Shown here: one piece after another, positions 19,076 through 63,430 of the stretch
Layout of the letters: the number at the start of each line of letters is the position of its first letter
Position numbering within the stretch: position 1 is the first letter of the stretch
Source of the DNA: Macrostomum lignano
Lineage: Eukaryota
DNA: 64,000 nt
Reading direction: 5' to 3'
Assembly: GCA_002269645.1 (NCBI GenBank)
Contig: NIVC01000013.1
Coordinates: 1,178,001 to 1,242,000, forward strand
Position numbers and translations under genes: made by a program
The notes under the pieces: model-generated
What the model was told of the DNA's origin: nothing
Databases searched by the model: none
Seen by the model: the letters and a program-made list of their open reading frames with translations, nothing else

Positions 19076-19589
19076 TTCAAATTTGTTACATAATGAGATG
19101 CTCAGGTGTCAGAGACAGTGCTCAGGTGTCAATGTGGAATACGATCTGAAATTGCTTAGGAAAAGTATTTTATTCTCCTTAAGTTTGTTGACTGAATTAA
19201 GTAAATTTTTACCGTTTTTCAGTTTTAAAGTCGACTAGTGCTTTGCATTTTGTATATACATTACTAAGTTGCTGTTTAAAACAATCTGTTTAAAAGAAAT
19301 TTAATCCATGTCTGTTGTTTCTCGATCATTAAGTTTATGGTGTTACATTCTATCTTATTCAGCTCATTGCATTAAAATATTTAATTAATTATGACTAAAA
19401 CTAAAACGAAGATTATTGCTAGAGTCACCAACCCCACGTATTAATAAATGGGTGTAACATCGGACTTTGTCTTGTGTATTATTATTTGGAAATTTTGTAC
19501 CTATTATGGACCTAAGACTTATTATCCCTATTGTTCAAATCTGCTAGTCATAGAGGCAGGCTTAAGCTATCTCTCATATCTGCCATTCC

Positions 19590-34850: not shown

Positions 34851-35769
34851 ATAAACAATCACAACAAACCTCCTAACGACTATTCCAAATCTTAACATCC
34901 ACAGTCTTAAAACTTCATGACAACATCCAAGCACGGCAAGTACAAGAATCGTTCTTCATCTTTTTCTCGCGTCCCTCTCTGAGGCTGTTTTGCACTTTTA
35001 CGATCAAGTGTTTGGCAGACACTGCGCGGGAAACTGTCTCGGGGACTGGACAGAGGGGAGATTGCTTCTGCCTAGCAACTAGGCTATCAGCAGCAGCAGC
35101 AGCTTTTAGAATTTCACGCCGCAATATGCCAGCAACACAGTTTGTTTCTATGCACCAATCCAACACTAACCCGGGTTGACAGCTTCTAGAAACAAAACAT
35201 CCATCTATCTATCCTACATCCAAGAATATTCTAGTATACAACTCCAGGGCTTAAATAGTTAGGCCACACAGACGCGGCTATTGCCTATATAATCCCTGTC
35301 CTCCCCCGCCGATTTCGCTTCGCTCTTCCGCTCAACTGTTCCCAATAGCAGCGCTTCGGGGGCCAGATGAGCTGGAGAGAGAGAGAGAGCGAGAGGTGGG
35401 TAAGGAGAAGTATTCGATTTCCAATCGGAACTGCCTCAGTGATTCCGTCAGTCTCTCCTTAACCCGTTCGAGAGCTCAAACTCACTTTGGTCGGGAAAGA
35501 GTGAGCGCTTTGAGCACAGAAAATTGGGGACTTAAGGCGGCCATGCGATATAAAATATATATACACGTAATATAGGGGGGGGGATTATACACACCTACCG
35601 CAGACTGGCGGCCCTGTCCGACCGACTTAGCAGCGACCTCCATGGTTGTCCAATTTGAGTTTATGCGATTGAGAACCTTGATTGCATATAGAGCTATAGA
35701 AATCGGGATGGAGATGGATATGAAGATAGCTGGGTTCCATGAAGCATTAAAGAGAATGTTTTACAGCGA

Positions 35770-41800: not shown

Positions 41801-43384
41801 TCAAATTTTGCAGCCAACCCACTCCGCCTGAGCAATGAGTATGACGTCATCGACTAGATCTTTACTGTACTCTTCGATGTCGCTGGCACTGGGCGCCGAA
41901 GGTTCAGGGGCTGAAGGCGCGGAAGCGGCAGCAGATTCAGCTGTGTTGAGTTTCGCTCCATCCGCGTCTGCGGCAACGGAGGTGTCAGGATCGGCGGATG
42001 CGACGGCACCTTCTTCATCCTCGGGCTGCCAGCCACGCAGGGCGCGAGTCCAGGCCGCAAGTTTGGCCACCGCCGAGGCTGTCGGGTCGCAGAAATTCCT
42101 GACGAACTCCTCGCCTAACGGCTGCATCTCGGCGTTGGCCACTGGCCGGCGACGGCACTCGGCGAAAGCTCGGTAGCCGTCAAAGTCGACGAAGCAGAGC
42201 CGGAGCGTGAGCTCGTCGTCGGGCCGGTCGAAGGTGCCGGAGCAGGGCAGCAGGGCGATGCCCAGCTCAGCCAGGAGCCGCTCGCACAGCTGCTCGCCAG
42301 TTGTCAGGCCCTCCTTGGCCAGGTGCTCGCGAACTGGCTCGAAATCTACTAGCAGACTGTAGCCGGCTTGCGGCTCGGTTGCTAGGAGACCCGCCGAGCG
42401 CAGCTTCTTGCAGGCGTAGGCGGCCACGGCCGCTAGCACGCGCCTGCAGTGCCGCATGTAGGCGTTGGCCGAGTGCAGGTCGCGCAACAGTCGAACTACG
42501 GCGAACTGCGCCGGGGTTGGCGCGCAAGCGAACGTGTGCGAGGCGGCGCTGACCACCGCCAGCCGGAGCTCGGCCAGCTCCTCCGGGAACAGAGCGTAGC
42601 CCAGACGCCAGCCGCCCAGACTGGCCCACTTGGACAGGCCGCTAACCACCACTGTGCCCTCCGGGTAATAGCTGGCCAACGAATAGAACTCGTCACCGAA
42701 GTGCAGCCTGGCGTACACTTCGTCGCACGCTACAATATAGGAGTTGCTGCGCAGATACGCGGCCAAGGACTCGAGCTCTTTGCGGCCGTAGGACAGACCG
42801 GTCGGATTGTCCGGATTGCACATGATCAGCAGCTTCGGCTGGCGCGGATCTGACCCGGCTGAGCGAGCCGCTCGATCCAGAGCGTCGCAGTTGAGCTTCC
42901 AGTCGGTATCGGCGGACAGAGGCACCGGCCAGTGTCGCCGGCTGCCGCTGAGAGCGGCCTGTGCGGCATAGGCGGGCCACGCCGGTGTGGGTACGAGCAC
43001 GGGACCGTCAAACACCAGGCTGACAAGGAAGGTCAGCTGCCTCGCGCCCGGACCGACAACAACGTCGCGCGAATTGAACTGCTCGAAACTGTCGTAGTGT
43101 TCGTGGAATTCCACCAGCATCTGGCGGAGCTCCTCCAGCCCGGGCGTCGGCAGATAGTGGCTGGCCTCGGCGAACTGGCGCAGCGCTCGAACGCCAGTCT
43201 CCAGCGGCGGGAACGGCGACTGACCAAACGCCAGATTGACAATCGGCTCGCCTGTCTCCTGACGCCGTCGCAGCTCCAAGCTGGTGGACAGTTTAGCAGC
43301 CGGACTGCTCAGTTGAGACAGCGGCACTGACAGCGGAGTTGGCAGCTGCTGATCGTGGCCGTCTGATGAAGATGAGGAAGACAT
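41801..43384 (-). CDS. PLP-dependent class I/II aminotransferase (aspartate aminotransferase-like), 527 aa, no coding introns
   Basis: NLAFGQSPFP, PAWPAY, CNPDNPTG, DEVY and the PLP-lysine motif SGLSKWASLGGWRLGY. Confidence 0.93.
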   Translation of the reverse strand: MSSSSSSDGHDQQLPTPLSVPLSQLSSPAAKLSTSLELRRRQETGEPIVNLAFGQSPFPPLETGVRALRQFAEASHYLPTPGLEELRQMLVEFHEHYDSFEQFNSRDVVVGPGARQLTFLVSLVFDGPVLVPTPAWPAYAAQAALSGSRRHWPVPLSADTDWKLNCDALDRAARSAGSDPRQPKLLIMCNPDNPTGLSYGRKELESLAAYLRSNSYIVACDEVYARLHFGDEFYSLASYYPEGTVVVSGLSKWASLGGWRLGYALFPEELAELRLAVVSAASHTFACAPTPAQFAVVRLLRDLHSANAYMRHCRRVLAAVAAYACKKLRSAGLLATEPQAGYSLLVDFEPVREHLAKEGLTTGEQLCERLLAELGIALLPCSGTFDRPDDELTLRLCFVDFDGYRAFAECRRRPVANAEMQPLGEEFVRNFCDPTASAVAKLAAWTRALRGWQPEDEEGAVASADPDTSVAADADGAKLNTAESAAASAPSAPEPSAPSASDIEEYSKDLVDDVILIAQAEWVGCKI

Positions 43385-43429
43385 CTCTGTTTGGGGCGGG
43401 AGGGGGTTAAGGGGTTTGCATGTGTGCTA

Positions 43430-44275
43430 ATGTGGATTCACCTGAAATGTTTGGGCAATGGGGTAGATTCCACCTGAAATGTTTGGGGAATAGGGTAGAT
43501 TCCACCTGAAATGTTTTGGGAGTGGGGTAGATTCCACCTGAAATGTTTGGGCAATGGGGTAGATTCCACCTGAAATGTTTGGGGAATGGGGTAGATTCCA
43601 CCTGAAATGTTTTGGGAGTGGGGTAGATTCCACCTGAAATGTTTGGGGAATGGGGTAGATTCCACTTGAAATGTTTGGGGAATGGGGTAGATTCCACCTG
43701 AAATGTTTTGGGAGTGGGGTAGATTCCACCTGAAATGTTTGGGGAATGGGGTAGATTCCACCTCAAATGTTTGGGGAATGGGGTAGATTCCACCTGAAAT
43801 GTTTGGGGAATGGGGTAGATTCCACCTGAAATGTTTGGGGAATGGGGTAGATTCCACCTGAAATGTTTGGGGAATGGGGTAGATTCCACCTGAAATGTTT
43901 TGGGAGTGGGGTAGATTCCACCTGAAATGTTTTGGGAGTGGGGTAGATTCCACCTGAAATGTTTGGGGAATGGGGTAGATTCCACTTGAAATGTTTGGGG
44001 AATGGGGTAGATTCCACCTGAAATGTTTTGGGAGTGGGGTAGATTCCACCTGAAATGTTTGGGGAATGGGGTAGATTCCACCTCAAATGTTTGGGGAATG
44101 GGGTAGATTCCACCTGAAATGTTTGGGGAATGGGGTAGATTCCACCTGAAATGTTTGGGGAATGGGGTAGATTCCACCTGAAATGTTTGGGGAATGGGGT
44201 AGATTTCACCTGAAATGTTTTGGGAGTGGGGTAGATTCCACCTGAAATGTTTGGGGAATGGGGGTAGATTCCATC
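43430..44275. repeat. G-rich minisatellite, 32-bp unit (ggggtagattccacctgaaatgtttggggaat)
   Basis: Array just upstream of the aminotransferase ATG. It may lie in a 5'-UTR intron, since a minus-strand donor TTG|gtgagt occurs near 44389. Confidence 0.97.
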
Positions 44276-44744
44276 ATAAAGTTTTTTTCAAAGCAGCCGA
44301 GAAAGTGAAGTTGAGTTTTCAGTGACTCACATGCTGGAATTTATTGAAAAGTACAAATTTGTTGTAGTACGAGTATCCTTTCTAACTCACCAAGTATCGC
44401 CTAAAACGTGGACTCAGTTAAAAATTCCGTTCTTTAATTACCGATCTGCATATCAGGCAAGACAGGGGGCACTGAAGCAGGGTGTCCGGGAAACAGAGGC
44501 AAATTAGCATTTAAGCTGCATTTTAAAAGCAAGCACACGGTGCACATCCTATCGCTAGGTTTGCGCTGGTTGGATAGATTTGGGTCGGCCAATAGATAGG
44601 GGTGGGCTTGCCACGGGCTTTAATGACTGTTTAAATTCACCAATGGACACACAGCTGCAGCCTTGCAGACAGGGGCTTTTATTGGCGGGAGGGGGAGGGC
44701 GCCGGTGGAGTGCTGGCGCCAGCACCAAGGGGCGCCAGCACTTG

Positions 44745-45340
44745 CAGTGTGTTTATCCAGTAATAGTTTTCCCTGAGCGAACTGCAGTTTGTGTTTATCC
44801 AGTAATAGTTTTCCCTGAAGGAACTGCAGTTTGTGTTTATCCAGTCCTATTTTTCCCTGAAGGAACTGCAGTTTGTGTTTATCCAGTCCTATTTTTCCCT
44901 GAAGGAACTGCAGTTTGTGTTTATCCAGTCCTAGTTTTCCCTGAAGGAACTGCAGTTTGTGTTTATCCAGTCCTAGTTTTCCCTGAAGGAACTGCAGTTT
45001 GTGTTTATCCAGTCCTAGTTTTCCCTGAAGGAACTGCAGTTTGTGTTTATCCAGTCCTATTTTTCCCTGAAGAAACTGCAGTTTGTGTTTATCCAGTCCT
45101 ATTTTTCCCTGAAGGAACTGCAGTTTGTGTTTATCCAGTCCTATTTTTCCCTGAAGGAACTGCAGTTTGTGTTTATCCAGTCCTATTTTTCCCTGAAGGA
45201 ACTGCAGTTTGTGTTTATCCAGTCCTAGTTTTCCCTGAAGGAACTGCAGTTTGTGTTTATCCAGTCCTATTTTTCCCTGAAGGAACTGCAGTTTGTGTTT
45301 ATCCAGTCCTAGTTTTCCCTGAAGGAACTGCAGTTTGTTT
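44745..45340. repeat. Minisatellite, 42-bp unit (ctgcagtttgtgtttatccagtcctatttttccctgaaggaa)
   Basis: Visible tandem array of about 14 units. Confidence 0.96.
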
Positions 45341-45799
45341 ATCCAGATTATTGCTTAAAATGGAAATAAAAAATTAACAAATCTAATTCAAATAATTTTA
45401 TCCATTGGTAGCAATTGGTTACTAAGATTTCCAAAGTGAAAATATTTATTCATAACTTTATCAATTTCATGGCAAAGGCAATTTATTTAACTTTTTCTCA
45501 ACACCGGTCACGACAATGTTTGAAGCAAGAATTTGCCTGTTTAAGTTAATAAGCAGTTGCCTATTTTGCTGAATACGTGTGTAATTAGAAAAACAATATT
45601 AGAGGGTCAGGAGCATGCTTAGCAGAATTCACAGGGCTGAATAGTTGAATATTAGCAACAGTAAAATATAAAAATTTTGGACTTCAAAGCATTTATACTC
45701 GTACAACAAGAAATGTTTAGATTGATTATAGATGCTTATTCAAAACAAATTGTTTCGGCTTTTATAAGCTGAAGTTGGAACACATATAAGATGGCAAAG

Positions 45800-46407: not shown

Positions 46408-49165
46408 TCAAAACGGCGACTCGCCCTTAGCCAAAGCCACAATGCTAAAGTTGAGATCGTCGCTCTGTCTAGCCATGAACTTCTGCACAACAGTAGCGGA
46501 ATCGGCGAGAAAGTTCGACTCGTTGGTGTCGCCGTGACTAACTGGGCCATCGCGCCGGCCGTCAAATTCTAGAATTTTGCCGCCCCGATTCAGCAGAGCG
46601 ATGTAGTGAAGATTCGTGCGCGACTCCCGGTCAGGAGCGGAGGTTTGGCCTTCGGTGGCTGCCGACTCGTGGGCGGTGTTCAAGCCCTGCGTGCGGGTGC
46701 CGATATGTATCGATTAGAATTTATGTAGGCTAAGTCATTTGCAACTGTTAATGATTAGTAGTATAGTTAGTACGTATACAAATCATAAGTCTGAGATCCT
46801 TAAAGCATGTTCTGCTTATCTGTAGATTTTATAAAGTCGATATGTATCGATTTTTAATAAAGCCGATATGTATCGATTTTTAATAAAGCCGATATGTATC
46901 GATTTTTAATAAAGCCGATATGTATCGATTTTTATAAAACCGATATGTATCGATTTATAATAAAGCCGATATGTATCGATTTTTAATAAAGCCGATATGT
47001 ATCGATTTTTATAAAACCGATATGTATCGATTTTCAATGAAGCCGATATGTATCGATTTATAATAAAGCCAATATGTATCGATTTTAATAAAACCGATAT
47101 GTATCCATTTTCAATGAAGCCGATATGTATCATTTTTTAACAAATCCGATATGTATCGATTTTCAATAAAGCCGATATGTATCGATTTTTAACAAAGCCG
47201 ATATGTATCGATTTTTAATGAAGCCGATATGTATCAATTTTTAACAAATCCGATATGTATCGATTTTTAATAAAGCCGATATGTATCGATTATCAATAAA
47301 ACAAATATGAATTGATATTAATAAAACCGATATGTAACGATTCTAGAGATCGATATGCATCGATGTTTATATACATCGATATGTATCAATTATTTATATA
47401 CGTTTTGGATAATTATATTGGAAAAAATATTCAACTCTGACATTGACATGTACATCTATGAATCATCGTGATGTAAAGTGAACGTACTTAATCTCAACCA
47501 CACCGCCCACAACTAAACGAAACGAAGAAAGTACATTTAATAAACCTGCGCTACTATTCTAGGAAAAACACTGTAATGTTTACATGTACATTCTTTTGTT
47601 TCGCACCGTTGCGTCCCTCCTTCTCGCACCGCCAACACCACCACTAACAGAGCCAGAGGCACCCGACGATAAAAGCTTGGCGATAAACTTCAAACGCGAC
47701 TGTACCTCGTCAGTTTCCATTATTTTGGCCCGCTCCTCCGGCGTTGAGTCCTTGGTTTTGGCGAAGAACTTGTCCAATGTAGAGTCCTCTGCAAGGTTGA
47801 TTAACAAAACTTGTTTAAGAATTTGTTCTCTTGTAAGACGGCGGGGGATTCTTAAGTGGTGATTATCAAGTGAGTTTAAGGAGTGATGGATTCTAGGAAG
47901 ACAGTGGGTGATTCTCAAGTGAGTTTAAGGAGTGATGGATTCTAGGAAGACGGCGGGTGATTCTCAAGTGAGTTTAAGGAGTGATGGATTCTAGGAAGAC
48001 GGCGGGTGATTCTCAAGTGAGTTTAAGGAGTGATGGATTCTAGGAAGACGGCGGGTGATTCTCAAGTGAGTTTAAGGAGTGATGGATTCTAGGAAGACGG
48101 CGGGTGATTCTCAAGTGAGTTTAAGGAGTGATGGATTCTAGGAAGACAGCGGGTGATTCTCAAGTGAGTTTAAGGAGTGATGGATTCTAGGAAGACAGTG
48201 GGTGATTCTCAAGTGAGTTTAAGGAGTGATGGATTCTAGGAAGACAGTGGGTGATTCTCAAGTGAGTTTAAGGAGTGGTGGATTCTAGGAAGACAGTGGG
48301 TGATTCTCAAGTGAGTTTAAGGAGTGATGGATTCTAGGAAGATGACGGGTGATTCTCAAGTGAGTTTAAGGAGTGATGGATTCTAGGAAGATGACGGGTG
48401 ATTCTCAAGTGAGTTTAAGGAGTGATGGATTCTAGGAAGACAGTGGGTGATTCTCAAGTGAGTTTAAGGAGTGATGGATTCTAGGAAGACGGCGGGTGAT
48501 TCTCAAGTGAGTTTAAGGAGTGATGGATTCTAGGAAGACAGTGGGTGATTCTCAAGTGAGTTTAAGGAGTGATGGATTCTAGGAAGACGGCGGGTGATTC
48601 TCAAGTGAGTTTAAGGAGTGATGGATTCTAGGAAGACAGTGGGTGATTCTCAAGTGAGTTTAAGGAGTGATGGATTCTAGGAAGACAGCGGGTGATTCTC
48701 AAGTGAGTTTAAGGAGTGATGGATTCTAGGAAGACAGCGGGTGATTCTCAACTGAGTTTAAGGAGTGCTGGATTCTAGGAAGACAGCGGGTGATTCTCGA
48801 GTGAGTTTAAGGAGTGATGAATTCTAAAAAGACAGTGGTTGATAGCTTGATTTTGTGCTTATTTCAAATAGAAACGACTCACTCTCAATCTGCAGCTGAT
48901 CTCTTTTATTGGCAATAGCATGCAGCAAAGCAACAGTGCCGCACGCATTCGACACTGTCTGCTTCATAAAATAAACCCCTTCAGTGCTTGCTGGCAGCTT
49001 TTCGCCAATAGGAGCCGCCTCAGACTTGTCAGTGATGGGGTAGATGAATAGTAGACAGGCTACTGGCTTTGGCAGCATGTCTAGGAGCTCCTTGTCCAAT
49101 GAGAACACATCCATAAAGTTCCATTGAGTAGACAGACCAAGACTATGGGCATACTTGTTTAGCAC
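46408..49165 (-). CDS. UCHL3: Ubiquitin C-terminal hydrolase, peptidase C12 (UCHL1/UCHL3 family); first exon not found
   Basis: Exons 49165-48883, 47788-47706 and 46686-46408 join in frame. Catalytic motifs QTVSNACGT, LHYIAL and EFDGR are present. The symbol marks the family; L1 versus L3 is not resolved. Confidence 0.9.
46830..47340. repeat. Intronic minisatellite, about 26-bp unit (aaagccgatatgtatcgatttttaat)
   Basis: Array in the last UCH intron. The core also occurs singly at about 46699 beside the acceptor. Confidence 0.94.
47865..48830. repeat. Intronic minisatellite, 49-bp unit (ctcaagtgagtttaaggagtgatggattctaggaagacggcgggtgatt)
   Basis: About 19-20 near-identical units filling a UCH intron. 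Confidence 0.97.
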
Positions 49166-50059
49166 CTGTTTGAAAAAATGCAAAGGAAAAAAGAATAAAA
49201 AAGTATGGACCTTGGCTTTTTAATTGTTAGAATTGCAGTGATATTTGGGATAGGCTACTTTCATCTAAGTTTAGGATGCTAAATTGAAATTTTATATGCC
49301 ATAGCATGGCCTTTAGGTATAAAAATCTATTTGGTAGAAAAAAGTTCAACATTTGATTGATAGATTTTAACTTTTGATAGATTTTATAGCAAAACAGCCA
49401 AATTTTTTATTATTTAGTAGGCCTAGCAAAGGATTTAATTGATTTTGAAAATAGATCTAGTCAATATATGTTCAATTTTGTTTTAAAATTATAATGCTAT
49501 AACTTTTATAAGGACATTTGTTAAAATTTGTTTAAATTAAAAGAACTTTTTGGTAAAAGTCAATGTGGTTCAAATAAGGAAACACTATTTTAATATTTAT
49601 TAAAAATCTAGAGCCTAGTCCTGATAATACTAAACTTATGCTACAAGAAAATTTCTACTTTTATCTGTGAATATATGCAAGTGTATAATTTTTACCTACC
49701 AAACATGAAAGTTTCTTAAAAAATATGGCATTCTTTAAAGAGCCTTCTTATATTATTATTTTTTATTTGAATTTGATATATATATATATATATATAATAT
49801 AGTCTATATAGGCAGTCCAATGCAGGCAATGCAAGCTACAAAATACTTGTACAAACTGAATTTTGTATAACAGCTCCGAAAAAAACAGAAAAATACAGAG
49901 AGCTGTGCCTGTGGTAAGAAATTCAAGGTAATAATTCTTGCATGCAATTAAGGCATTTTAATAAAGTATGCTTGCATGCTTAAACAGAAAATAAATTCAT
50001 CCTATTAAGCTTGCTTCTTTGTTTGTGACCTGTGGCCCATGGTCTTGAACTGAAAACCT

Positions 50060-51358: not shown

Positions 51359-54300
51359 TATCCATCATGCAAGAAGAGCCCCTTTTGGCAGTTTGAAGCA
51401 CTGGCAGACCTCGAACCTTGGGCCAAGAACAGGAAGACCTTAGAGAAGAAGAGTGCATACTGCATCAGCTTGAGCAAAGACTCACGAATGGAATTTCTAA
51501 CTGATGATGACATTGACAGCGATTTTGACTATTGACAAATCAATGCAATTGTTCAATTGCTCACTTGATCACTTATTTACCATGATAGTTTTATGCATAA
51601 GTTCGGCTTATAAAATGTAGGGTTACTAATGTGAAAATTTTAGGGAACAAATTAAAGTATATTCAAAAAGCAAGGGCAGCTATGAGAAATGACAAATATA
51701 TGAAAAACTACAAATGACCTGTTAATATTAACAGCAAAAAAATTACTGCATGCTTATTATTACTAAAATATTATATGCTTATAGGAAAATGAGCTGAAGC
51801 TACAAATATTTTTGTTTAAACAAAATAGCCATTATATATGTAAAAATTTTTATAATACTAATATTACAACATTGTACATGACACTCTAGGCCTAAATTCA
51901 ATCAAATCAAAGCTATAAATGTTTAACTTTTTTTTCTAAAAGCTAGGCTTATTATCCTAAAATGAATTTAATGTGAAATTAAAAACAATATATAAAGTTT
52001 TATTTGTTTTTAAATTAAAATCCATATGAAATCCAAAATATAAAATCTGTTACTATGGTGCAAGACCAAGATGGCCACACACCAAGATGGCCACAGCCAC
52101 AACATTAAATCTCTATTATATCTGCTTTCTCTCTAATAATAATTAGCAACTTAATCCTGTTGAACTTTTCACCAAGAATTTTTTCCGGAATTTTGTGATC
52201 CGGGCCTGATTTTTAATTGATTTCTGGATAAAGGCCCGGATCAGCTTTTTTGGCCCAGAACAGCCCTTTTATCTAGAAAAAGATCTGGAAGTATGATCTG
52301 GTAAAATTTTGGGAAAAGGAAAGCTGTTCTGGTTGGATTTTCCGGAATTTTTCACCTGAAACACTATGGAATTCTGGGATCAGCTGCTCCCTTGACCTGA
52401 ATTTCAGCCAAGTTCTGGGCGAAGCTGATCCGGGAAAACTTCCGGGAAGTTTCGGGAAAATGATTCCGGGAAAATGATCCGGAAAATTCACCGAGATCAG
52501 CTCCCTTGACCCGAATTTCAGCCAAGTTCCAGGCAAAGCTGATCCAGGAAAATTTTGGGACTTGAGTTGAAATCAATCAGGCATCCATTACAAGTTTACC
52601 ATGGGGATTTTGAGAAGAAGCCTCCAATGGAAAACTGCTGAATACAGACCCTAGCAAATGGTTATCCCATCAGGCAATCCCTGGTATCTGTTTGGTCAGC
52701 GGTGCTAATTCCTCTTGGAAAGCGAGGGTTAATAAAGCCTTGCTTTTGTTGCGACAACTTATCTGCTTTACGTTAATACTGTAGTGTCCATAATGTGAGG
52801 CTGAGCTCATCCTTTATACAGGTGACAATTGATCAAAAAATTGTTGCGCCCTGTTTGTGTGCAAGAGGTTTGACTTCCACTGGCATGTAGTCTATCACAG
52901 CTGCTTAGTGTGTCAACAGGCTAAATGATTCTATTGTCATATTTGATGCTTAGAAGCATGAGTCAGCCAACCATATTGTTTGGCATAGCTAGGTGTCTAG
53001 ACGGAGACTGTAGCATAGTTCCAAATAGCTCTAACTGGCCCAATATGCAAAGCAGCTTCACTATTAAGATAGATGCTAATACAATTTATTTTGGTACATG
53101 CTCCAATGGTTTGTCTAAGGCGTTTGCAGTTGCACTAGCCATGAGCAGATCAAGTCTAGAGTAGTCTATATGGCCTACTAGGGTCAATAACCATATCACG
53201 TGGCTCAAGGCAGCTGCTAAGCTGACATGCGATGGATAATCAATCCTTGCTTCTGTTGTGACTCAAGGCAGCTGCTAAGCTGACCTGCAATGGATAATCA
53301 TTTTTGCTTCTGTTGTGGCTCAAGGCAGCTGCTAAGCTGACATGCAATTTGAAAATACAAATGAATTATACACTTCAGTATTGGCGCACTGACTTTTTTC
53401 TTTCTTATTTCCATTTTCGAAACTTTTGGGTAGTATGTGTGCCCTAAGCGACAACCTTATAATCTAGACTTGAGTATCTTCTCGTTTCTGCTTTGTTCTT
53501 CGCTTTCTTGACAGATTGTGCAAGATATGCCAAGATGGTCTTCTAGCACAATGAATTGCTTTAGTGTCTTGACAGGTCTTTTCAAGACCTTACAAAAGGG
53601 GGAAGCAAAATGTCGAGATTGAACAGTTTAAAATTTTATACGCGACTGCAAAGGCATATTTACTGTAAATTATAATGCTGGCGTGTGAAATAGCTTATTT
53701 AGGCTGATATTGCTATGCGCACAATTTCTAAGATGGTTGATCTTAACAGATCATACAAGTTCTTACAATTTCTTAATCAAGTTGAATAGCATATGCTCCA
53801 CATCAATATATAAGTTTAAGAGTCCTTCCAAAACTTGGCTTATTTTAATTATTATTATAATGTTCACCTTGGGAATGGCCAGAGACCAATGACACCAAAA
53901 CATATATTAATTAAATGCGCATTAAATTTTAACTAAATAGGGAAATAGCAAATGCACCAAACTAAAGCAATTATTGTAACAGCAATGCAACCTATTTAGA
54001 TCAATATATTGTGCGGGGAACTCTACAGCACGCAGGAATCAAATTTTAAATTTTTTTTATGGGTTTTATAATGAGTGTTTGCATTTCAAACAAATATATG
54101 ACGCAGCGATTAAAATAGGCAGTAAATGCAAAGCAGACAAACACAATAAAAATTTGCAAGGTGTTTATTATTTTTAAAATTATTATGAATTTTATATTCC
54201 TATTGTATGAAAACGTATTTCAAAATTTGTTGCGCTCACCAAGTTAGTTATGCAGCTTGGTGCTCAATATCTTGTATACATTTAATATATTGCTGATTTA

Positions 54301-55129
54301 ATCACCCATTATTATAATTAGATACTCACTTTACTATATATTTATTTAATTTTTTATCACAGAATAAAATCATAATCGCGTCAGGCTCAGGCGCAATGAG
54401 TGCACTGAAGTGCACAGGTGTACAGCCACTCTCTGTCAGCCAACTGGAAAAGATTAAGAGCACCTATAGGGTGCTGTGGTATAACAGCACTCAGACATTT
54501 TCCGAAGTTCTGCAGCTTTCCAGCAGCCACTTTAAATCATATATGCCAATAATAAGGCTAGGATGGAAAACGGTTTAAGCAGTTTTAAGTGTGATAAACT
54601 ATGATCTGCATAGGGCCATAGCTAATGTTAATTTTCACTGTGCTTTTCACTAATATTATGTATCATAATAACGTCTATATTTATTGTGACTATGTTGAAT
54701 TATTATATATAATACAGTAGTGGCTATAAGTGAAACCCCAATTGATAATCACAATAATTTCATTTTTATCTAAAAAAAACCTAAGGCTTCACTTAGCACT
54801 GCTGTCACAGTGTCATTGCAGGAACAAACACAACACAAATTAACGTGTGTGCAATAGAGAAATCCCCAAAAATCTAATATCCTTTTGTAGGGGATAGCAA
54901 AAAGGGGATTTATTGAATTTTGTTGTAAATCAATGCTTGCTATAGCAATAATATTATCCAAAAAATATATATGCTTTAAGCTGCAGCTGATATGTTCAAT
55001 TGGAGATTTGGGGTGAAAGAAACAGAGTTGATGAAGGATTTGGAAAATTAGGAAGGGATTTTCTGAAAATTTTGTCAAAATTTTATACACATTTTTGTCT
55101 CAATTTAGTGAAAAAAATTACAAAATAGC

Positions 55130-55600
55130 CATAGTCAGGAAGGTGGCCTTTACGCCGGAATTTTCCAGCATAATTTTGCACTTGCTGACAATCTTGGCGT
55201 ACATTTGGCATATAGAATTTTCAGGTTCAACATGAAGTGTAAACAACCGGTGTACAAGAAATAGAAAAGTTCAGGGCTGTTGCAATTGTGTAGTTAAATA
55301 TCAATCAAATAAAGCTGTTCTGAAAATAAACGGTTAAATAAAATAGAAAATATTAACACAATTTACGAGAAAAACAAAATTCAAAAAAACAAACTTACAA
55401 AGAATATCAGTTTTTAGAAACATTTAGCCGTTTCAAAGTTAAATAAAATTGTTACATTTTTAAAAACACAAATTCTTTAAAAACTTGGCATATAAACAAC
55501 TTTAGGCTTGGCATGAAAAAAAGTTAAACTTTACGCCAGCGTAAAATTAAAAAGACACAAATTTTTGTTCCGGCATACGCCTGCCATGATCCAGACTATG
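55130..55600. mobile_element. 470-bp MITE nested in the inner element
   Basis: Imperfect TIR of about 35 bp (catagtcaggaaggtggc...gccggaa versus ttccggc...gccatgatccagactatg), with GC on both flanks. Confidence 0.5.
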
Positions 55601-56698
55601 GCAAAACAGTAAGCAATTTTTTCTTCCAAATATAATCTAGCTAATTGTTGTATAGAATAACACTAGCATCATATTTTTATATCTAGTACATAGTAAAAAG
55701 TCTCCATTTATAAAAAGGCAATAATATGCACTTGGCAATTGCAGGAAAAATCTTTTTTTCAATTCCAATTGTGCTAGATTTTTTTCTAGTGATGAATATT
55801 AGCTACTCTATTTAACTATCTATCTATTGCTTTATGCAGTTTTCATGAAAACTTTTCACTTTTATTGAATTTTTATCTGTAAACACCGGTATCAATTAAT
55901 GAAAAATTGTGTTAAAACATTTTTTAACAAAATAATTTGTACTGAAAAATGTTATATTTTTTTAACATAGCTCCTTTTGCCTATATTTGCTAGATAAATA
56001 CAACTTTGTATGAATTTTAGGCTACACTATGTTTTTTTGCACTACATTATATGTGATTGTAGCTATATGCATAACTTTTTATTAATTTATAGCAAGGCTA
56101 TTTCTTCCAATTTTTTCAAGCATATAAATGTTATAGATTTTCTGTAAAGTTTAACTATAAAGTTTTTAGCTTGATTGAAATTCAAATTATTAGATTTTAA
56201 TAAATCAAATATTAGGCTAATGTTTTGTTTATTATTTCAATATGAAAAATAATACACTATGAGTTTTTATATACTGTCAAAGTATATGCATACATAGTAT
56301 ACCATTAAAGTATTTCAGCTTATTTATTCATTGTCTTGTCACAAATTTGCATCATATTTTAATCATGTTAAATTGTTTGCATAATAAGATTAAGTTATAT
56401 GCTAAGTAAGCATCAAATCAGTTAATTTGGAACAATAATATAATTAGATTTAATGAGGTAAGGTTATTTTAAATGTTGTTTAGTTAGTGAACAAATTTTG
56501 CAATCCACAAATGTTATGCAGTCAAAGTAGGTCAAATATCAATCTTTCAACTGTAAACTTGAATTAATTTAATATACAATTTGTCTGTTTGGTATAACAG
56601 TTTATCTTATTCTTTAAACCATTACTAGGGTTCTACAATCTTCATTCACGAAAAAGGCCAAAAGCACATGGCTATTGTTCTATGCCTCGGGGACCTAA

Positions 56699-57037
56699 TC
56701 TGCCCGCCGAGGCGAGTCTGTCAGCTACATGTGCAAGTTTGCTTCTGGCGCAACAATTGGTTTGCAGTTTGGCAAGATTTTGGGCTTCGACCTGGTGGCT
56801 CAACAGGTGCGCATTGCCGTGTTTTAGCATGTGGCACCTTTGCAAACGCATTTTTTCCCTGACTTTATGGAGCTTTCCGATGTGAACACATTCGTCACCA
56901 GGGCTGCCAACAAATCAGACCTACCGACTGCGCAAGTAGCCCTTACAGACATTCGCTGCAAATGCTTCTTCATTCCCATCCCAGCATCTGACCATTTTGC
57001 CATGATTCCCATCACCACCGCCTTCGAGCACAATTAG
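56699..57037 (+). pseudogene. C-terminal remnant of an animal EnSpm-type transposase
   Basis: SYMCKF...LQFGKILGF, an in-frame TAG at 56825, then ...VALTDIRCKCFFIP...FAMIPITTAFEHN*. The pattern matches CMC transposase C-termini as I recall them; not searched. Confidence 0.55.
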
Positions 57038-57981
57038 CGCGTATCCATTGCATTATGTCTTATGTCTCGCCAATTTTGTCTTCACTGTCCACCCCATTGT
57101 CTCAAAGTTCATCGTTAATCATTCTTATCACTCATCTTCAGTGCTTGTCACCCTATACTGTTAACTTATTGCTCATCTTTATTGTTCCATTGCTCGTACC
57201 CCCATTGCTCATTCTTATTTCCCTTTTGCTCACAGCTCCAATTATTGTCCTATTGCTTATCCCTACTGCTCATCATTGTTTGTCTGTCTGTCTGCCCCGT
57301 CATGTCTGTTGCGCTTTTTTATACAATGCACTTACCCAGCATTTTAAAGTGTAAGAATTGGAGTTCATGAGATATATAGTCAGCGCTATAAATAAAATTG
57401 GGCCTTATTGATTTCTTATCCACATAATGGCAAATATGAATTAATTGTTTGTCTTTTTCAGCTGAGCAAGAGCTTGGGAGCAGGACCTGTGACCGCGCGT
57501 TACAGTCCAGAAGTGCGGGTTAAAGTAATAATACTGCATACATATCTTACAAGATCTGTTTTTAACTTGCGATTCTGGCAATGATCTTGGCACGTTTCTT
57601 AACAGATCGTAGCAGATCGACCAAGATCCATGAAAATATTTCTCAAGATCTTGCAGGAACTTATAAGAAAAAGGTTGTATAAGAATTTTCAAGTTAACTT
57701 AAGGCTTGTCGATTAGGGTGATCATTGTTATGTATTGAAGGTAACCTCGTAAACTGTTGAGTATTAGGTGCAGCAGAAATTTTAAAACTGTTCACTAAAA
57801 GTGCAGCTAGAACCCAAAGTTGATTGAATGATATATTTTTTGCATCAGTATAAACATATGTGCAGTAAGGAAAAATGATACCTTGATAGCATCAAAGTAG
57901 CCATTAATACCCTGGTTACGTCCTATACAGTTCAAACTGACTGCTATTTATAGAAGTGAATATCACATCCCTTTCAGCACA

Positions 57982-59655
57982 ATGGATTGCAACGAATTCT
58001 CTGTGCTGTCCAATGAAAAGAAACAGAAAATAGTTGATGTGCTAGCTACTCTCTGGGCCTTCCTGCTGTACCTCACACATTGGTGCCGTCCAGCACCTTG
58101 GGTGTGCATCGAGTCTATATTGACATTGTACCGACGGCTATTAGGTGCTGAAATTCCTCTTGTTGACCTTGGATGTAACAGTGTTGGAAAACTTGTATAT
58201 CAGTATAGCCAGAGAATCGCCACAGACAGCGTGTGGCTTTGGCTCATGGATCCCATGCCCAGATTTGCCGTAAATAGATAGCCCAATTTGCCAGGCAGGG
58301 CCAATCCCAGCACCACGGCACAACCAAAAGTGGTCAAAGTTGGCGTACATAGTCGATCATGTTTGCCAGGCAGGGCCAATCCTGGTGTCGCGGCACAACC
58401 AACAGTGGCTGAAGTTGGCGTACATAGTGGGCCAAATTTGCCAGGCAGGGCCAATCCCGGCATTGCGGCACAACCGACAGTGGCCGAAGTCGGCTGGTTG
58501 CTCACGCCAGACGCTAATGTCAACGCCATCCTGAAGCACTGGCAGTGGTACATAACATGCTTGCATGAATTGCCACTAAAAAAGCCACTGCATCAGTCGC
58601 CTGTCAACTCTGGACTGGAACAATGCATCACTGCAAAGCCATCAAAACACTCTGCTACGCAGTTGGCTGTTGAAAACAATAAGCACAAGGTGGCAGCTTC
58701 CAGCCGCAATGCCATCATCACTCTGCAGAAATGGCCCCTGCCAATGCTTTGCGACGTCATGGGTCTCCTCATGACTGCCATAGAAAGCCCAATGGACATT
58801 TATACGGGCTTTCTATGGCAGGACGAACAGGACAGAGAGGAGGACGGAGAGGAGGTCGAGGATGCAGAGGATGACTTGTGCAACTTCAGCATGGTACCTG
58901 CTGCTGACTTGTGCAACGTCAGAATGGCACTTGCTGCTATGCTAGAGCGGCTGGTTGTCATCCAAGTCGGCTTACGAGATATGATTAGGTGTGGCTATGG
59001 CCTTAACTTTAACTGCTGCTTCCACCTGCTCAGATCTTGGGCTCGGCAGCTAGGCATGGGCCTGCATTTGCCACAAAAAGCAGGAATAGAAAAACCCACC
59101 ACTATGGGCACGTAGCCCTTGGCCAACCGAGCCGACGCTCTGCTAGTGCTACTCCATCAGGAGGCAGGCAGATTTGATGTGGCCTATCAATGCAGAAAAG
59201 GCTGGAGAGATCTCATTGGCTTCCTGCTACAAATGCTGATGAAGGAGGGCATCCCCTGTTGCTGTTGCTATTGCACAACAGATAATGTCGCTGTGGCCAT
59301 TGTGGGTGTAGAGGCAAGGTACTGCAGCTTTGATGCACCAGTAGTGCTCTCAATCTGCCATGAGATGGCACAATTAATGGTCCGCTACCCAGCACTACTG
59401 GCATTGCCTAGCTCAGGCCTTACCTCGCAAGGGCTTCTTTTTGACCCTGATGAGCCAATTCCCACCACTGTGGCCAGTGTTGCGAGCAGTATGGCCAGCG
59501 TTGAACTGCCGCCGGATTCCAGCACGGTTCCGCCAACAGCAGCCACTACTTCCGCCACCGTGGCCGGCATTGTAGACAACGAGTATTATCTACGCTCTCG
59601 TTACCATAGATATAGCTTGGGTATAGGCAGCCAGCATAATAAAATGTTAAAGTGA
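57982..59655 (+). pseudogene. 557-codon frame with N-terminal LOTUS/OST-HTH-like domain and two in-frame TAG stops
   Basis: Track ORFs 57982-58281, 58288-59115 and 59119-59655 share one frame. Acceptor ctttcag lies 4 nt before the ATG. WVCIESILTLYRRLLGAEIPLVDLGCNSVGKLV fits the LOTUS consensus. Confidence 0.6.
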
Positions 59656-60140
59656 AGAAAGTTTTAACAGTGCTACTACTATCCTAACGCTGACATCCAG
59701 TTTCTGACAAATTAATCTGGGGTGAATCTTATTGATGCTACTAGTTTCATACAGGGTTAATTGGGCTTATGGGACTAATTAGTCTTACTAATCTTACTAA
59801 TTTATTAATAAATGTCACGCAGGATTTGAGAATTTCTTTGAATTGGGGAACACCATGCGAGCAAGGATAGCAAAGGCAGAATTCCTTAAAATGAGGAACT
59901 GTAACTTAGTTTTTTTTTAGCAGAGATGCTCAACAGATGCCAAGTACTCACTAACTCAACTCAATAGGTTCTTCCCATGTATTTTTCCTATACTTATGAG
60001 TCCAGACCCATTTATACCTACCTTTATATGAGTCTTCCACTTATCTGGTGCATTTACCTTTTTCATGTGTACCACTTTTGTGTGACTAATACCCTATTCA
60101 TGCCTTATTCATGTCGTACGAATTTATAAACACTTTAGAT

Positions 60141-60435
60141 CAGATGTCGGCAAACTTTATTACCTCAAGGGCCAGATAAGGGATCTAGCTTATGGCTGCG
60201 GGCCAGGTGAGAGAGACAGTAAGATGCAGTAGAAAATGAAAAATGAGAGGGCAGAGGATGGGATGAGAAAAGAAATGAGATAAGATAAGAAGAGAGTGGG
60301 GATAGAGGGACAAGATGAGCAGAGAATAGGGAATAAAGGAGAGGGGAGAGGATACAAGAGAGGAGACAAGAGAAAGAGAGCTGAGAAGACAAACCCTGAG
60401 CAGGCTGGATTGCAATGGTGAAGTGCCAACCCCTG
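60141..60435 (+). mobile_element. hAT-Charlie-like MITE with GA-rich core, nested in the outer CACTA element
   Basis: Ends cagatgtcggcaaacttt...aagggccagat and ...tgccaacccctg. Flanks ctttagat and gtttaaat match 6/8 as an 8-bp TSD. Confidence 0.7.
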
Positions 60436-61046
60436 GTTTAAATGACAATGGGTAACATTCTTTTGTGGTGTCCTTATCTTTTATTCTCCATGTCGTTCCA
60501 CCTTTCTGGTGCATTTACTGTTTTTGTCTTGTGTACCTCTTTTGCGTGACGTCAAATATACGTAACAACTTGCTACTCTATTTGAGGCAGAATTACACCT
60601 CCCCTTTTTCAGTAAATCTATACTTTCTTGCCATTTGCTTGGACTTGTGTGCCGATCCAGTTCACTCGCCCGGAATTTAGCCCAGATTTGTGTGCTTATC
60701 TGGTTCACTCCCCCAGAATTATGTGCTGATCCGGTTCATTTGCCTGGAATTTAGCCTGGATTTGTGTGCTGATCAAGTTCAGTTGCACGGAATTCACCTA
60801 GAGCTGTCACCAGAATTTTTTTAGAGATCCGGGTCTATTTTCCAGAATTTTTCTTTTTGATCTAGAAATTTTGCCCGGATTCTATAAACTTTTGTTACAG
60901 ATCTAGAATTTCCACTGGGATCTAATTGTATTACTGGAATAGGGAAAAACTCCAGATGAATGCAAAAAATTCGGGCAAAATTCCAGGTGAAAAGTTCAAT
61001 GGGATAGCTATTGTTTTATTATCGTACACTATTTTGTTTTAATCAA

Positions 61047-62208: not shown

Positions 62209-62632
62209 CAGGGATGGGCAGACTTTTACCTCAAAGGCCAGATAAAGAATCCAGCTCATAGCTGATGGCAGATGAAAGTGGAAAGAAGAAGGAATAGACG
62301 ATTCGAAGAGAGGAGAAGCGACAGAGGGGATAAAAGAAAAGATAAAAGATAATAGGAGAGATGAGGGAGAGAGGACTATGAGAGGAGAGAGTAGAGAGGA
62401 GCAAGTAAAGAGGAGAGAGTAGAAGAGCGAGTAAAGAGGAGAGAGTAGAGGAGCGAGTAGAGAGGAGAGAGCAGAGATGAGATAGGAGAGTAGAGAGAAC
62501 AGAAGAGAGGTTACAGAGACGAGAGGAGAGAGGAGAGACAAAGGTAGAGAAGTGAGTGAGGAGAAAGGAGAGGAAAGAGGAGAATTGAGAGGGGAGAGAG
62601 TAGAGAGAGGAGGAGAGATAAGAGAGAAAGAC

Positions 62633-62683
<51 letters not shown>

Positions 62684-63430
62684 CAGAGCAGAGAGAAAGC
62701 GCAGAGCAGAGAGAAACGAGAAGAGATAAGAGAGAAAAGATAAAAGAAGAGAAAGGAGAGATGAAAGAGCGGACGAGAGAGAAGAGAGGTGAGGGAAGAG
62801 ACGAGCGACGAGGGGAGAGAGAAGAGATAAAACAAGAAAAGATCGATGAGAGGAAAGAGAGAGAGGAAAGAGGTGAGGGAAGAGATGAGAGAAGAGGGGA
62901 GAGAGGAGAGAGAGGAAAGAGTAGAGAGGAGAGATGAGAGAGTAGAGGAGAGAGTTAGGAGAAGAGAGAAAAGAATAGAGAGGACAAGGAAGAGACGAGA
63001 GAAGAGGGGGAGAGAGGAGAGAGGAGAGGAGGGAGAAAACGAAAAAGTAGAGAGGAGAGGAGAGAGAAAAGAAGAGGGAAGAGATGAGATAAGAGATATG
63101 AAAGAGAATAAAGATGAGGTAATATACGAAAGAAGATGGGAGAGAGAAGAGAGGAGAGGGGAGAGAAAACGAAAGAGTAGATAGGAGAGAGGAGAGCAGA
63201 GAGAAAACGAAAAGTAGAAAGGAGAGAGGAGAGGAGAGAGAAAAGAATAGGGAAGAAATGAGATAAGAGAGATGAAAGAGAAGAGAGATGAGGGAAGATA
63301 CGAGAGAAGAGAAGAGAGAGGAGAGACGAGGGATGAGAGAGAAAAAAGGAAACAGAGAGACGATAGAAATTTCAAAGGATCCAAGGGACGTAGGGAGAGT
63401 CAGGGAGAGGCCAGAGTTTGCCAATACATG
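62209..63430 (+). mobile_element. hAT-Charlie-like MITE with a 1.1-kb expanded GA core
   Basis: Head cagggatgggcagacttttacctcaaaggccagataa is homologous to 60141. Tail ggccagagtttgccaatacatg. Flanks tttccaag and ttttagag match 5/8. Confidence 0.65.

What the first reader, a model, noticed from the sequence alone, without database searches (positions are those of the whole stretch)
57982..59655. CACTA-like transposon carrying a LOTUS/OST-HTH-domain gene: candidate transposon-encoded mimic of piRNA-pathway factors
Seen: a 557-codon frame lies inside the TIRs of the outer element (52156-61003) but outside the inner transposase-bearing element. Its residues 16-79 (about 58027-58218) read WVxIxxIxxLYxxLLGxxIPxxxLGxxSVxxLV. 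Established: LOTUS domains occur in the germline factors Oskar, TDRD5/Tejas, TDRD7/Tapas and MARF1, and extended LOTUS domains bind Vasa. Inference: this is either a TnpA-like accessory gene or captured cargo that could decoy Vasa/piRNA silencing, analogous to plant VANDAL anti-silencing proteins. I do not recognise the C-terminal 300 aa (RKGWRDLIGFLLQ...TTDNVAV...RYCSFDAPVVL).
Basis: partly seen in the sequence, partly recalled or inferred. Interest (0 to 1): 0.85.

Follow-up and report, generated by a model that had tools for sequence, protein, structure and literature searches.

The report
Dead orphan gene inside flatworm transposon
The long reading frame is a decayed, no longer working gene with no known relatives, inside an old DNA-transposon remnant in the flatworm Macrostomum lignano; it only faintly resembles a LOTUS domain, and nothing shows that it interferes with piRNA silencing.

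Summary
The window is Macrostomum lignano, assembly GCA_002269645.1, contig NIVC01000013.1. The frame 57982-59655 (+) is a real coding relic, but two in-frame TAG stops (58279, 59113) break it.

- **Paralogues:** Two paralogous loci from the same genome carry the same ORF in the same place. They read CAA and GAG where the window has TAG. They have their own lesions: a TGA at codon 51, and indels of -1, -34, +11 and -5 nt.
- **Selection:** Substitutions between copies fit neutral decay (68 synonymous observed, 65.2 +/- 6.5 expected). CpG sites decay about eight times faster than other sites. The nearby UCH gene differs almost only at third codon positions.
- **Homologues:** None in 5.8 billion protein clusters, 1.84 billion representatives, PDB, metagenome contigs or viral contigs.
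- **LOTUS:** OST-HTH is the only Pfam hit but falls below threshold (15.8 bits, cut-off 23.8, E=0.013). Structure models were unusable.
- **Transposon:** The outer inverted repeats are real but not CACTA. The inner 4277-bp insertion is real, shown by empty sites in both paralogues. No transposase domain was found in the sequence scanned, 52560-61010.

Verdict: an ordinary pseudogene inside a transposon remnant. The piRNA or Vasa decoy idea is unsupported.

The parts
57982..59655 (+). Single-exon ORF relic: 557 codons plus TGA, interrupted by two TAG stops. No homologues outside its own paralogous loci.
   Evidence: stop statistics; no homologues; paralogue comparison, neutral substitution pattern.
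58279..58281 (+). Premature stop 1 (TAG, codon 100). The paralogues L007 and L008 read CAA here.
59113..59115 (+). Premature stop 2 (TAG, codon 378). The paralogues L007 and L008 read GAG here.
58015..58212 (+). LOTUS/OST-HTH-like stretch (residues 12-77), below threshold.
   Evidence: Pfam PF12872 E=0.013, 15.8 bits, cut-off 23.8. Paralogue copy E=0.047. hhalign against TDRD7 LOTUS1 fragments: 26 columns, E=0.029. Shuffle test P about 0.002. AlphaFold2 pLDDT 51, unusable.
58265..58494 (+). Three in-frame tandem copies of a 75-nt (25-aa) unit, ..LPGRANPG.AAQPTVAEVGVHS.., inside the ORF.
57970..57977 (+). Splice or trans-splice acceptor-like cctttcag, ending 4 nt before the ATG. Inferred from sequence only.
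   Evidence: Conserved in the paralogues.
59807..59812 (+). AATAAA polyadenylation-signal-like hexamer about 150 nt after the stop; another lies at 59638-59643. Inferred from sequence only.
52154..52194 (+). Left terminal inverted repeat of the outer element (ATCCTGTTGAACTTTTCACC...).
   Evidence: In L007 and L008 it reads ATCCCATTGAACTTTTCACC, which matches the window's right end 20 of 20.
60965..61005 (-). Right terminal inverted repeat of the outer element.
52195..52560 (.). Left subterminal repeat region (CCGGAATTTT and GATCCGG motifs; a 56-nt unit twice).
60640..60964 (.). Right subterminal repeat region. A 74-nt unit occurs twice here and in more copies in L007 and L008.
53442..57718 (.). 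Younger nested insertion of 4277 bp, with TIRs CCCTAAGCGACAA / CCCTAATCGACAA and a 2-bp TG duplication. It is absent from both paralogous loci and has no recognisable protein domain.
   Evidence: empty sites; no Pfam hit in six frames.

Best explanation
The frame is a pseudogene. It is the decayed remnant of the single protein-coding gene inside an old TIR-bounded DNA element, about 4.5 kb long before a later 4.3-kb insertion, in the Macrostomum lignano genome. The element, with an intact ORF, was already at this site next to a UCH gene when the host segment was duplicated. Since then every copy has drifted without selection, with fast CpG loss that suggests cytosine methylation of the locus. 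The window copy picked up two nonsense mutations. The other two copies picked up a nonsense mutation and frameshifts. No working protein is made today.

Shown: the coding origin, the lesions, the neutral pattern, the synteny, the TIRs and the nested insertion. Inferred: the ancestral protein of at least 557 aa had an N-terminal LOTUS-like winged-helix-type domain, a 25-aa repeat linker, an acidic patch and a Cys-rich C-terminal part. Also inferred, weakly, is that the ORF belonged to the element, as its own protein or as cargo, rather than to the host. Neutral decay in every copy starting from an intact ancestor is what transposon genes typically show.
For: - **Coding relic:** 2 internal stops against 11-32 in the other frames; shuffles gave at least 11.
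- **Host and locus:** L006 is 100% identical to window 36408-59135 and comes from M. lignano NIVC01000013.1.
- **Paralogues:** L007 and L008 are collinear with window 49.8-60.8 kb and contain the ORF.
- **No shared lesions:** the window's TAGs are CAA and GAG in the paralogues. The paralogues have TGA at codon 51 and indels of -1, -34 and +11 nt, and L008 also has -5 nt. The common ancestor was therefore intact.
- **Neutrality:** differences by codon position are 69/58/76. There are 68 synonymous changes against 65.2 +/- 6.5 in a simulation that preserves the mutation spectrum (P=0.36), and 3 stop-related changes against 6.2 expected.
- **Control:** UCH exons are 97-99.7% identical, with 11 of 16 differences at third codon positions.
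- **Rate:** the ORF is no better conserved than its flanks (87% against 92-93% identity).
- **CpG loss:** about 42% and 35% per lineage, against 9% pairwise divergence at other sites. CpG observed/expected is 0.50 in the ORF and 1.05 in the neighbouring genes. M. lignano has DNMT1, DNMT3 and low-level 5mC (PMC11292947).
- **Element:** TIRs and subterminal repeats.
- **LOTUS-like N-terminus:**
Against: - No copy outside the syntenic paralogues was found, so mobility of the ORF-bearing element is not shown.
- The right TIR could not be recovered in L007 or L008, and no empty site for the outer element is available.
- No clear target-site duplication exists; at most there is a 2-bp AT.
- The LOTUS match is below threshold, and it did not improve in a CpG-polarised older state (13.8 bits).
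- The protein databases hold the annotated M. lignano proteins but not unannotated ORFs, so other copies, even intact ones, may exist in the genome.
- Divergence between the window and L007/L008 rises from 0.9% to 11% across 20 kb. That points to a mosaic history I have not resolved.
Confidence: 0.6

Rival explanations
1. It was a lineage-specific host gene, not transposon-borne. It became redundant or dispensable and decayed in all paralogous copies after polyploidisation. The flanking inverted repeats are unrelated transposon debris.
For: The only homologues are syntenic paralogues next to the same UCH gene. The ORF has an acceptor-like site just before the ATG and AATAAA signals, like an ordinary single-exon gene. 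No transposase was found in the sequence scanned, 52560-61010. About 85% of this genome exists in three paralogous copies (PMC10733133).
Against: The two TIR copies pair only with each other in the window. Ancestrally they matched 20 of 20, and inverted subterminal repeat arrays back them. All three copies decay neutrally with no sign of past constraint; a host gene would usually keep one constrained copy. The CpG depletion resembles that of the surrounding transposon sequence, not the neighbouring genes. No annotated M. lignano protein resembles it.
Confidence: 0.22
2. The ORF is the element's own transposase, from a family not yet described. Its N-terminal helix-turn-helix would be a DNA-binding domain for the subterminal repeats, and the LOTUS resemblance only reflects a generic winged helix.
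For: The architecture fits a small autonomous DNA transposon: TIRs, subterminal repeats, and one central intronless ORF of about 560-640 aa, in an element of about 4.5 kb once the nested insertion is removed. No other coding capacity was found in the sequence scanned, 52560-61010.
Against: There is no similarity to any transposase in Pfam, in 1.84 billion protein representatives or in PDB. Eukaryotic DDE transposases are usually detectable. No DDE/RNase H signature could be examined, because the structure model has pLDDT 36.
Confidence: 0.1
3. It is a living gene whose two TAG codons are read through or recoded. It makes a LOTUS-domain protein that could interfere with Vasa or piRNA silencing.
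For: Both internal stops are TAG followed by CCC, and the frame has no frameshift across 1.67 kb. The LOTUS-like hit is the only Pfam match. The host is an animal, and its literature covers the piRNA pathway (paper list).
Against: The paralogues have ordinary sense codons (CAA, GAG) at both positions, so the TAGs are recent substitutions. The substitution pattern is neutral. The paralogues are broken in other ways. The intact aminotransferase (527 codons, no in-frame TAG, ends in TAA) argues for the standard genetic code. The NCBI record annotates no gene here.
Confidence: 0.03
4. It is not a gene at all: an accidental open frame in G+C-rich repeat DNA.
For: It contains a 75-nt tandem repeat and a repeat-prone tail, and it has no homologues.
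Against: Two stops in 558 codons, against at least 11 in 2000 shuffles. First codon positions are G-rich. All lesions are lineage-specific, which implies an intact ancestral ORF of at least 557 codons.
Confidence: 0.02

Closest known systems
LOTUS / OST-HTH domain proteins (TDRD5, TDRD7, Oskar, MARF1; Pfam PF12872)
   Same: Residues 12-77 align to positions 4-57 of the 71-position Pfam model. The core Y-R-x-L-x-G-x-x-I-P-x-x-x-L-G-x-x-S/T-V/L lines up with vertebrate TDRD7 LOTUS1. It is the only Pfam hit in two copies.
   Different: The score is below the family threshold. No partner domain (Tudor, NYN, RRM) is present. No fold was obtained. The protein is otherwise without relatives, and the gene is dead. 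Vasa binding needs an extended LOTUS helix that cannot be judged here.
TIR DNA transposons with subterminal repeats that carry an accessory or captured ORF (for example CACTA/En-Spm with TnpA, or VANDAL Mutator elements with the VANC anti-silencing protein)
   Same: Terminal inverted repeats, arrays of short subterminal repeats in inverted orientation, one internal ORF, and a later nested insertion.
   Different: The termini are not CACTA/CACTG. There is no 3-bp (CACTA) or 9-bp (Mutator) duplication, no transposase of any known family, no similarity to TnpA or VANC, and no second copy that would show mobility.
Pseudogenes and transposon relics duplicated by the recent polyploidisation of Macrostomum lignano
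   Same: Three paralogous copies, as for about 85% of this genome (PMC10733133). Each copy carries independent inactivating lesions and shows neutral substitutions.
   Different: The window copy is about 12% diverged from the other two, far above the genome-wide 2.2% and above the 0.9% seen 15 kb away in the same block.

Membership tests
LOTUS / OST-HTH (PF12872) | Score at or above the Pfam gathering threshold (23.8 bits) | tested here: not met
   15.8 bits, E=0.013; 15.9 bits for residues 11-90; the paralogue scores 14.0 bits; the CpG-polarised older state scores 13.8 bits. The full-length query gave no hit.
LOTUS / OST-HTH (PF12872) | Conserved core motif of helices 2-3, in register with known LOTUS domains | tested here: inconclusive
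   hhalign against 9 TDRD7 LOTUS1 fragments: 26 columns, 31% identity, E=0.029. A local HMM scored 4.0 bits, exceeded by 44 of 20000 shuffles (P about 0.002). BLASTP against one LOTUS fragment gave nothing.
LOTUS / OST-HTH (PF12872) | Winged-helix fold | tested here: inconclusive
   Single-sequence AlphaFold2 gave pLDDT 51 (residues 1-99) and 36.5 (full length). Both models are all-helical, low-confidence and not usable for a fold search.
LOTUS / OST-HTH (PF12872) | Binding of Vasa/DDX4 through an extended LOTUS domain | not testable with these tools
   This needs a pull-down or a confident complex model. The gene is also broken.
CACTA / En-Spm (CMC) transposons | Termini 5'-CACTA/CACTG ... 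TAGTG-3' | tested here: not met
   The termini read ATCC(T/C)(G/A)TTGAACTTTTCACC, or CCC...GGG if the flanking AT is taken as a duplication.
CACTA / En-Spm (CMC) transposons | 3-bp target-site duplication | tested here: not met
   The left flank ends ...AACTTA(AT) and the right flank starts (AT)AGCTATT. No 3-bp repeat exists; a 2-bp AT is possible.
CACTA / En-Spm (CMC) transposons | En/Spm-type transposase (Transposase_21/24 or another DDE domain) | tested here: not met
   Six-frame Pfam scans of 52560-57990 and 59600-61010, plus the ORF itself, found no transposase domain at E<=1. The left terminal 52154-52559 was not scanned.
CACTA / En-Spm (CMC) transposons | Subterminal repeat arrays | tested here: met
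   Repeats at 52195-52560 and 60640-60964 are related in inverted orientation. This feature is shared by many TIR superfamilies.
Mobile element in general (the outer element) | Presence/absence polymorphism or multiple copies with target duplications | tested here: inconclusive
   All three paralogous loci carry it. The left TIR and its flank are collinear. The right end was not recovered in L007 or L008. There are no other copies in the window, the fetched loci or metagenome contigs. The complete genome could not be searched.
Mobile element in general (the inner insertion 53442-57718) | Empty site in a paralogue, TIRs and a target duplication | tested here: met
   L007 and L008 read gtagtatgtaTGatcattg where the window has ...gtgTG[CCCTAAGCGACAA...TTGTCGATTAGGG]TGatcattg.
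Functional protein-coding gene | Uninterrupted frame and purifying selection | tested here: not met
   The window copy has two TAG stops. The paralogues have TGA and frameshifts. There are 68 synonymous changes against 65.2 +/- 6.5 expected under neutrality.

The most novel reading that the evidence does not exclude
The three dead copies would be fossils of a Macrostomum DNA-transposon family whose own protein starts with a true LOTUS domain. Intact members elsewhere in M. lignano or its sister species would still make a protein that docks on Vasa or germ-granule components. That would be a transposon-encoded LOTUS protein acting on the host's piRNA machinery.
Probability: 0.04. Interest if true: 0.75.

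Novelty: new member of a known kind. Interest (0 to 1): 0.2.

Why it matters
As it stands, very little: this is one more decayed ORF in a transposon remnant of a repeat-rich, recently polyploid genome. The case has two small values. First, paralogous copies in a neopolyploid genome can settle gene-versus-relic questions quickly. Second, it leaves a cheap lead: a tblastn search of Macrostomum genomes would show whether a transposon family with a LOTUS-like protein exists. A living transposon-encoded LOTUS protein would be a new kind of transposon counter-defence in animals. Nothing here shows that one exists.

Tried and rejected
- **Homologue searches, all empty for the ORF:**
  - word-indexed search of 5.8 billion clusters
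  - full phmmer against 1.84 billion representatives
  - PDB sequences, N-terminal and C-terminal parts at E<=10
  - metagenome contigs by back-translated peptides
  - viral contigs
  - exact-product look-ups of the ORF pieces
- **TIR 20-mer in metagenome contigs:** 5 hits. That is about what I estimated for chance, and none extends beyond 20-25 nt.
- **Structure prediction:** residues 1-99 and the full length both came out at low confidence, so I ran no fold search.
- **TAG reassignment or readthrough:** rejected. The paralogues read CAA and GAG at those positions, and an intact neighbouring gene uses the standard code.
- **Tiny introns that could remove the stops:** rejected by reading the sequence; the only GT..AG spans are 12 and 4 nt.
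- **Processed pseudogene of a host LOTUS gene:** no parent gene was found in databases that include the M. lignano proteomes.
- **CpG-polarised older state of the N-terminus:** it did not raise the LOTUS score.
- **Other copies of the ORF or element within the window:** none.
- **Literature:** a full-text search for transposon-encoded LOTUS proteins found nothing relevant.

Full report
**1. What is in the sequence**

The frame 57982-59655 on the + strand has 557 sense positions and ends in TGA. It is not open. In-frame TAG codons sit at 58279-58281 (codon 100) and 59113-59115 (codon 378), so the ORF list shows three pieces of 99, 275 and 178 aa in one frame.

The frame is still clearly of coding origin.
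- It has 2 internal stops, while the other five frames have 11 to 32.
- None of 2000 shuffles gave fewer than 11 in its best frame.
- First codon positions are G-rich.
- The stretch is a 49-53% G+C island in 30-35% surroundings.

Inside the ORF are three in-frame tandem copies of a 75-nt unit (58265-58494). A cctttcag acceptor-like site ends 4 nt before the ATG, and AATAAA hexamers lie at 59638 and 59807. I take these as gene-like signals by inference only.

**2. Where the window comes from**

Exons of a ubiquitin C-terminal hydrolase (Peptidase_C12) lie on the minus strand at about 46.4-49.2 kb. Their closest relatives are Macrostomum lignano proteins. The locus fetched for one of them, L006, is 100% identical to window 36408-59135. 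It comes from GCA_002269645.1, contig NIVC01000013.1, and record position = window position + 1,178,000.

The host is therefore a free-living flatworm. Only the UCH gene is annotated across that 22.7-kb stretch; the focal ORF is not.

**3. No relatives anywhere else**

The full-length product, with X at the two stops, found nothing in any of these searches:
- the word-indexed search of 5.8 billion protein clusters
- phmmer against 1.84 billion cluster representatives
- PDB sequences
- metagenome contigs
- viral contigs

The first collection does contain M. lignano proteins from both NCBI and UniRef. No annotated M. lignano protein is therefore a parent or paralogue. Unannotated copies in the genome could not be searched.

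**4. The decisive comparison: paralogous loci**

The 90% cluster of the window's UCH protein holds two more M. lignano proteins, on other contigs. Their loci, L007 (NIVC01000014.1) and L008 (NIVC01000991.1), are collinear with window 49.8-60.8 kb and contain the ORF. This fits the published finding that about 85% of this genome exists in three paralogous copies (PMC10733133).

The three-way alignment and translations show the following.

| Feature | Window | L007 and L008 |
|---|---|---|
| Codon 100 | TAG | CAA |
| Codon 378 | TAG | GAG |
| Codon 51 | CGA | TGA |
| Frameshifting indels | none | -1 nt, -34 nt, +11 nt; L008 also -5 nt |

L007 and L008 also carry several in-frame indels and a 237-nt in-frame repeat expansion near the 3' end.

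No lesion is shared between the window and the other two copies. By parsimony their common ancestor had an intact ORF of at least 557 codons. All present copies are broken.

**5. Selection**

Between the window and L007 there are 203 substitutions, 173 of them transitions. They are spread 69/58/76 over codon positions 1, 2 and 3. I re-placed the same substitution types, with CpG context kept, at random sites in the ORF. That simulation expects 65.2 +/- 6.5 synonymous changes; 68 are observed (P=0.36). Stop-related changes number 3, against 6.2 expected. The crude Nei-Gojobori ratio of 0.55 is therefore an artefact of the strong transition bias.

As a control, the neighbouring UCH exons are 97-99.7% identical, and 11 of their 16 differences are at third codon positions. 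The aminotransferase at 41.8-43.4 kb differs at 1 of 1560 nt. The ORF (87% identity) is less conserved than its non-coding flanks (92-93%).

CpG sites tell the same story. Only 20 CpGs are shared; 30 survive only in the window and 36 only in L007. Each lineage has thus lost about 35-42% of its CpGs, against 9% pairwise divergence at other sites. CpG observed/expected is 0.50 in the ORF and 0.36-0.59 in the rest of the element, but 1.05 in the two neighbouring genes. M. lignano has DNMT1, DNMT3 and low-level 5mC (PMC11292947). Methylation of this locus is a reasonable inference.

The conclusion is that the ORF has been free of constraint since the copies separated.

**6. The LOTUS question**

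For residues 1-99, Pfam returns one family, OST-HTH (PF12872). The hit has E=0.013 and 15.8 bits against a gathering threshold of 23.8, with residues 12-77 aligned to model positions 4-57 of 71.

| Query | Result |
|---|---|
| Full-length product | no Pfam hit |
| L007 copy, N-terminus | same single hit, same register, E=0.047 |
| N-terminus with CpG decay reversed, chosen blind to LOTUS | E=0.053, no improvement |

I then made a profile of nine vertebrate TDRD7 LOTUS1 fragments. It aligns 26 columns around YRRLLGAEIPLVDLG at E=0.029. A local HMM of the same alignment scores the real sequence above all but 44 of 20000 shuffles. Single-sequence AlphaFold2 models have pLDDT 51 and 36.5 and cannot test the fold.

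The resemblance is real enough to keep as a lead, and it sits in the right register. It fails the family's own threshold, and the fold is untested. The remaining 450 residues match nothing.

**7. The transposon context**

The arms 52154-52194 and 60965-61005 are 41 nt long and 80% complementary. The 14-nt core occurs without mismatch only at these two places in the window. In L007 and L008 the left arm reads ATCCCATTGAACTTTTCACC, identical at 20 of 20 positions to the window's right arm, so the ancestral pair was better matched. Both ends carry arrays of related short repeats in inverted orientation. This is a credible TIR element.

It is not CACTA. The termini are not CACTA/CACTG, there is no 3-bp duplication (at most a 2-bp AT), and there is no En/Spm transposase.

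The inner element is real. Window 53442-57718 (4277 bp) is missing from both paralogues at a clean empty site. It has 13-nt TIRs (CCCTAAGCGACAA / CCCTAATCGACAA) and a 2-bp TG duplication. Six-frame Pfam scans of 52560-57990 and 59600-61010 found no transposase or any other credible domain. The left terminal 52154-52559, which is subterminal repeat, was not scanned.

Without the nested insertion, the outer element would be about 4.5 kb with one central ORF, the layout of a small autonomous DNA transposon. Its mobility cannot be shown. All three loci carry it, its right end was not within reach in L007 or L008, and no other copy was found in the sequence available.

**8. Interpretation**

The best reading is a dead gene inside an old TIR element. 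The element was duplicated with its host segment, and the gene has decayed neutrally in every copy since, probably under methylation. Neutral decay of all copies from an intact ancestor is typical of transposon-borne genes. That is why I rank transposon ownership above a host-gene origin, but the margin is modest because no non-syntenic copy is known.

Readthrough of the TAGs, a reassigned code and a chance ORF are each rejected on direct evidence. The proposed Vasa/piRNA decoy function has no support beyond the sub-threshold domain resemblance, and it cannot apply to this copy.

**9. Verdict**

The novelty is low: an unclassified TIR element with a decayed ORF that has no known relatives. The one lead worth a cheap follow-up is a whole-genome search for intact copies in Macrostomum species.

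Noticed in passing
window 41801-43384 (-); L007 17273-18832; L008 16756-18315: An intact, intronless 527-aa class I/II aminotransferase with 64% G+C. Its best PDB matches are bacterial-type aspartate aminotransferases. It is 100% and 99.2% identical at protein level in the two paralogous loci, yet the NCBI record does not annotate it. It is a candidate horizontally acquired gene, or simply a missed gene.
   Followed up: partly
window 53442-57718: A young 4277-bp non-coding TIR insertion, absent from both paralogous loci, with TIRs CCCTAAGCGACAA / CCCTAATCGACAA and a 2-bp TG duplication. Like the outer element it has CCC...GGG termini flanked by a 2-bp direct repeat (AT for the outer one), so both may belong to one unclassified superfamily.
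   Followed up: yes
window 37900-60800 compared with L007 and L008: Divergence between paralogues climbs from 0.9% (37.9-45.3 kb) through 3.8% (UCH) and 6.4% (49.8-51.8 kb) to 9-11% inside the element. The nearest-copy relationship also switches: for the aminotransferase the window is closest to L007, but for the ORF L007 is closest to L008. This suggests gene conversion, recombination between subgenomes, or assembly mosaicism.
   Followed up: partly
window 57982-59652, 52154-53441, 59656-61005 versus 41801-43384 and 46408-49183: CpG observed/expected is 0.36-0.59 in the element and ORF but about 1.05 in the two neighbouring genes. CpG sites in the ORF mutated about 8 times faster than other sites. 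This looks like locus-specific germline cytosine methylation in a flatworm reported to have only low-level 5mC.
   Followed up: partly
window 46408-49183 (-): A UCH-L3-like ubiquitin hydrolase gene with introns. One intron holds a long tandem array with a period of about 49 nt (about 47858-48843), and another array lies at 46825-47400.
   Followed up: partly
window 59510; L007 and L008 ORF tail: The Ser/Thr/Ala/Pro-rich tail of the ORF carries a 237-nt in-frame repeat expansion in L007 and L008 relative to the window.
   Followed up: partly
window 60160-60400 and 62226-63400: Purine-rich (AG) low-complexity arrays share a 44-nt head sequence (60160-60203 vs 62226-62269, 82%). The copy inside the element is flanked by 52-55-nt direct repeats (60035-60086 and 60496-60550). 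This is probably another repeat family nested in the element, and it is also present in L007 and L008.
   Followed up: no
window 21626-21695 (+): An Rfam tRNA hit just above threshold (30.9 bits, gathering 29) that ARAGORN does not call. It may be a tRNA-derived repeat.
   Followed up: no
window 43400-45400 and 16900-21000, 31800-34900: Several kilobase-scale tandem or low-complexity arrays are open in multiple frames on both strands. They produce spurious long ORFs and spurious Pfam repeat hits (Cornifin, PKD-like).
   Followed up: no
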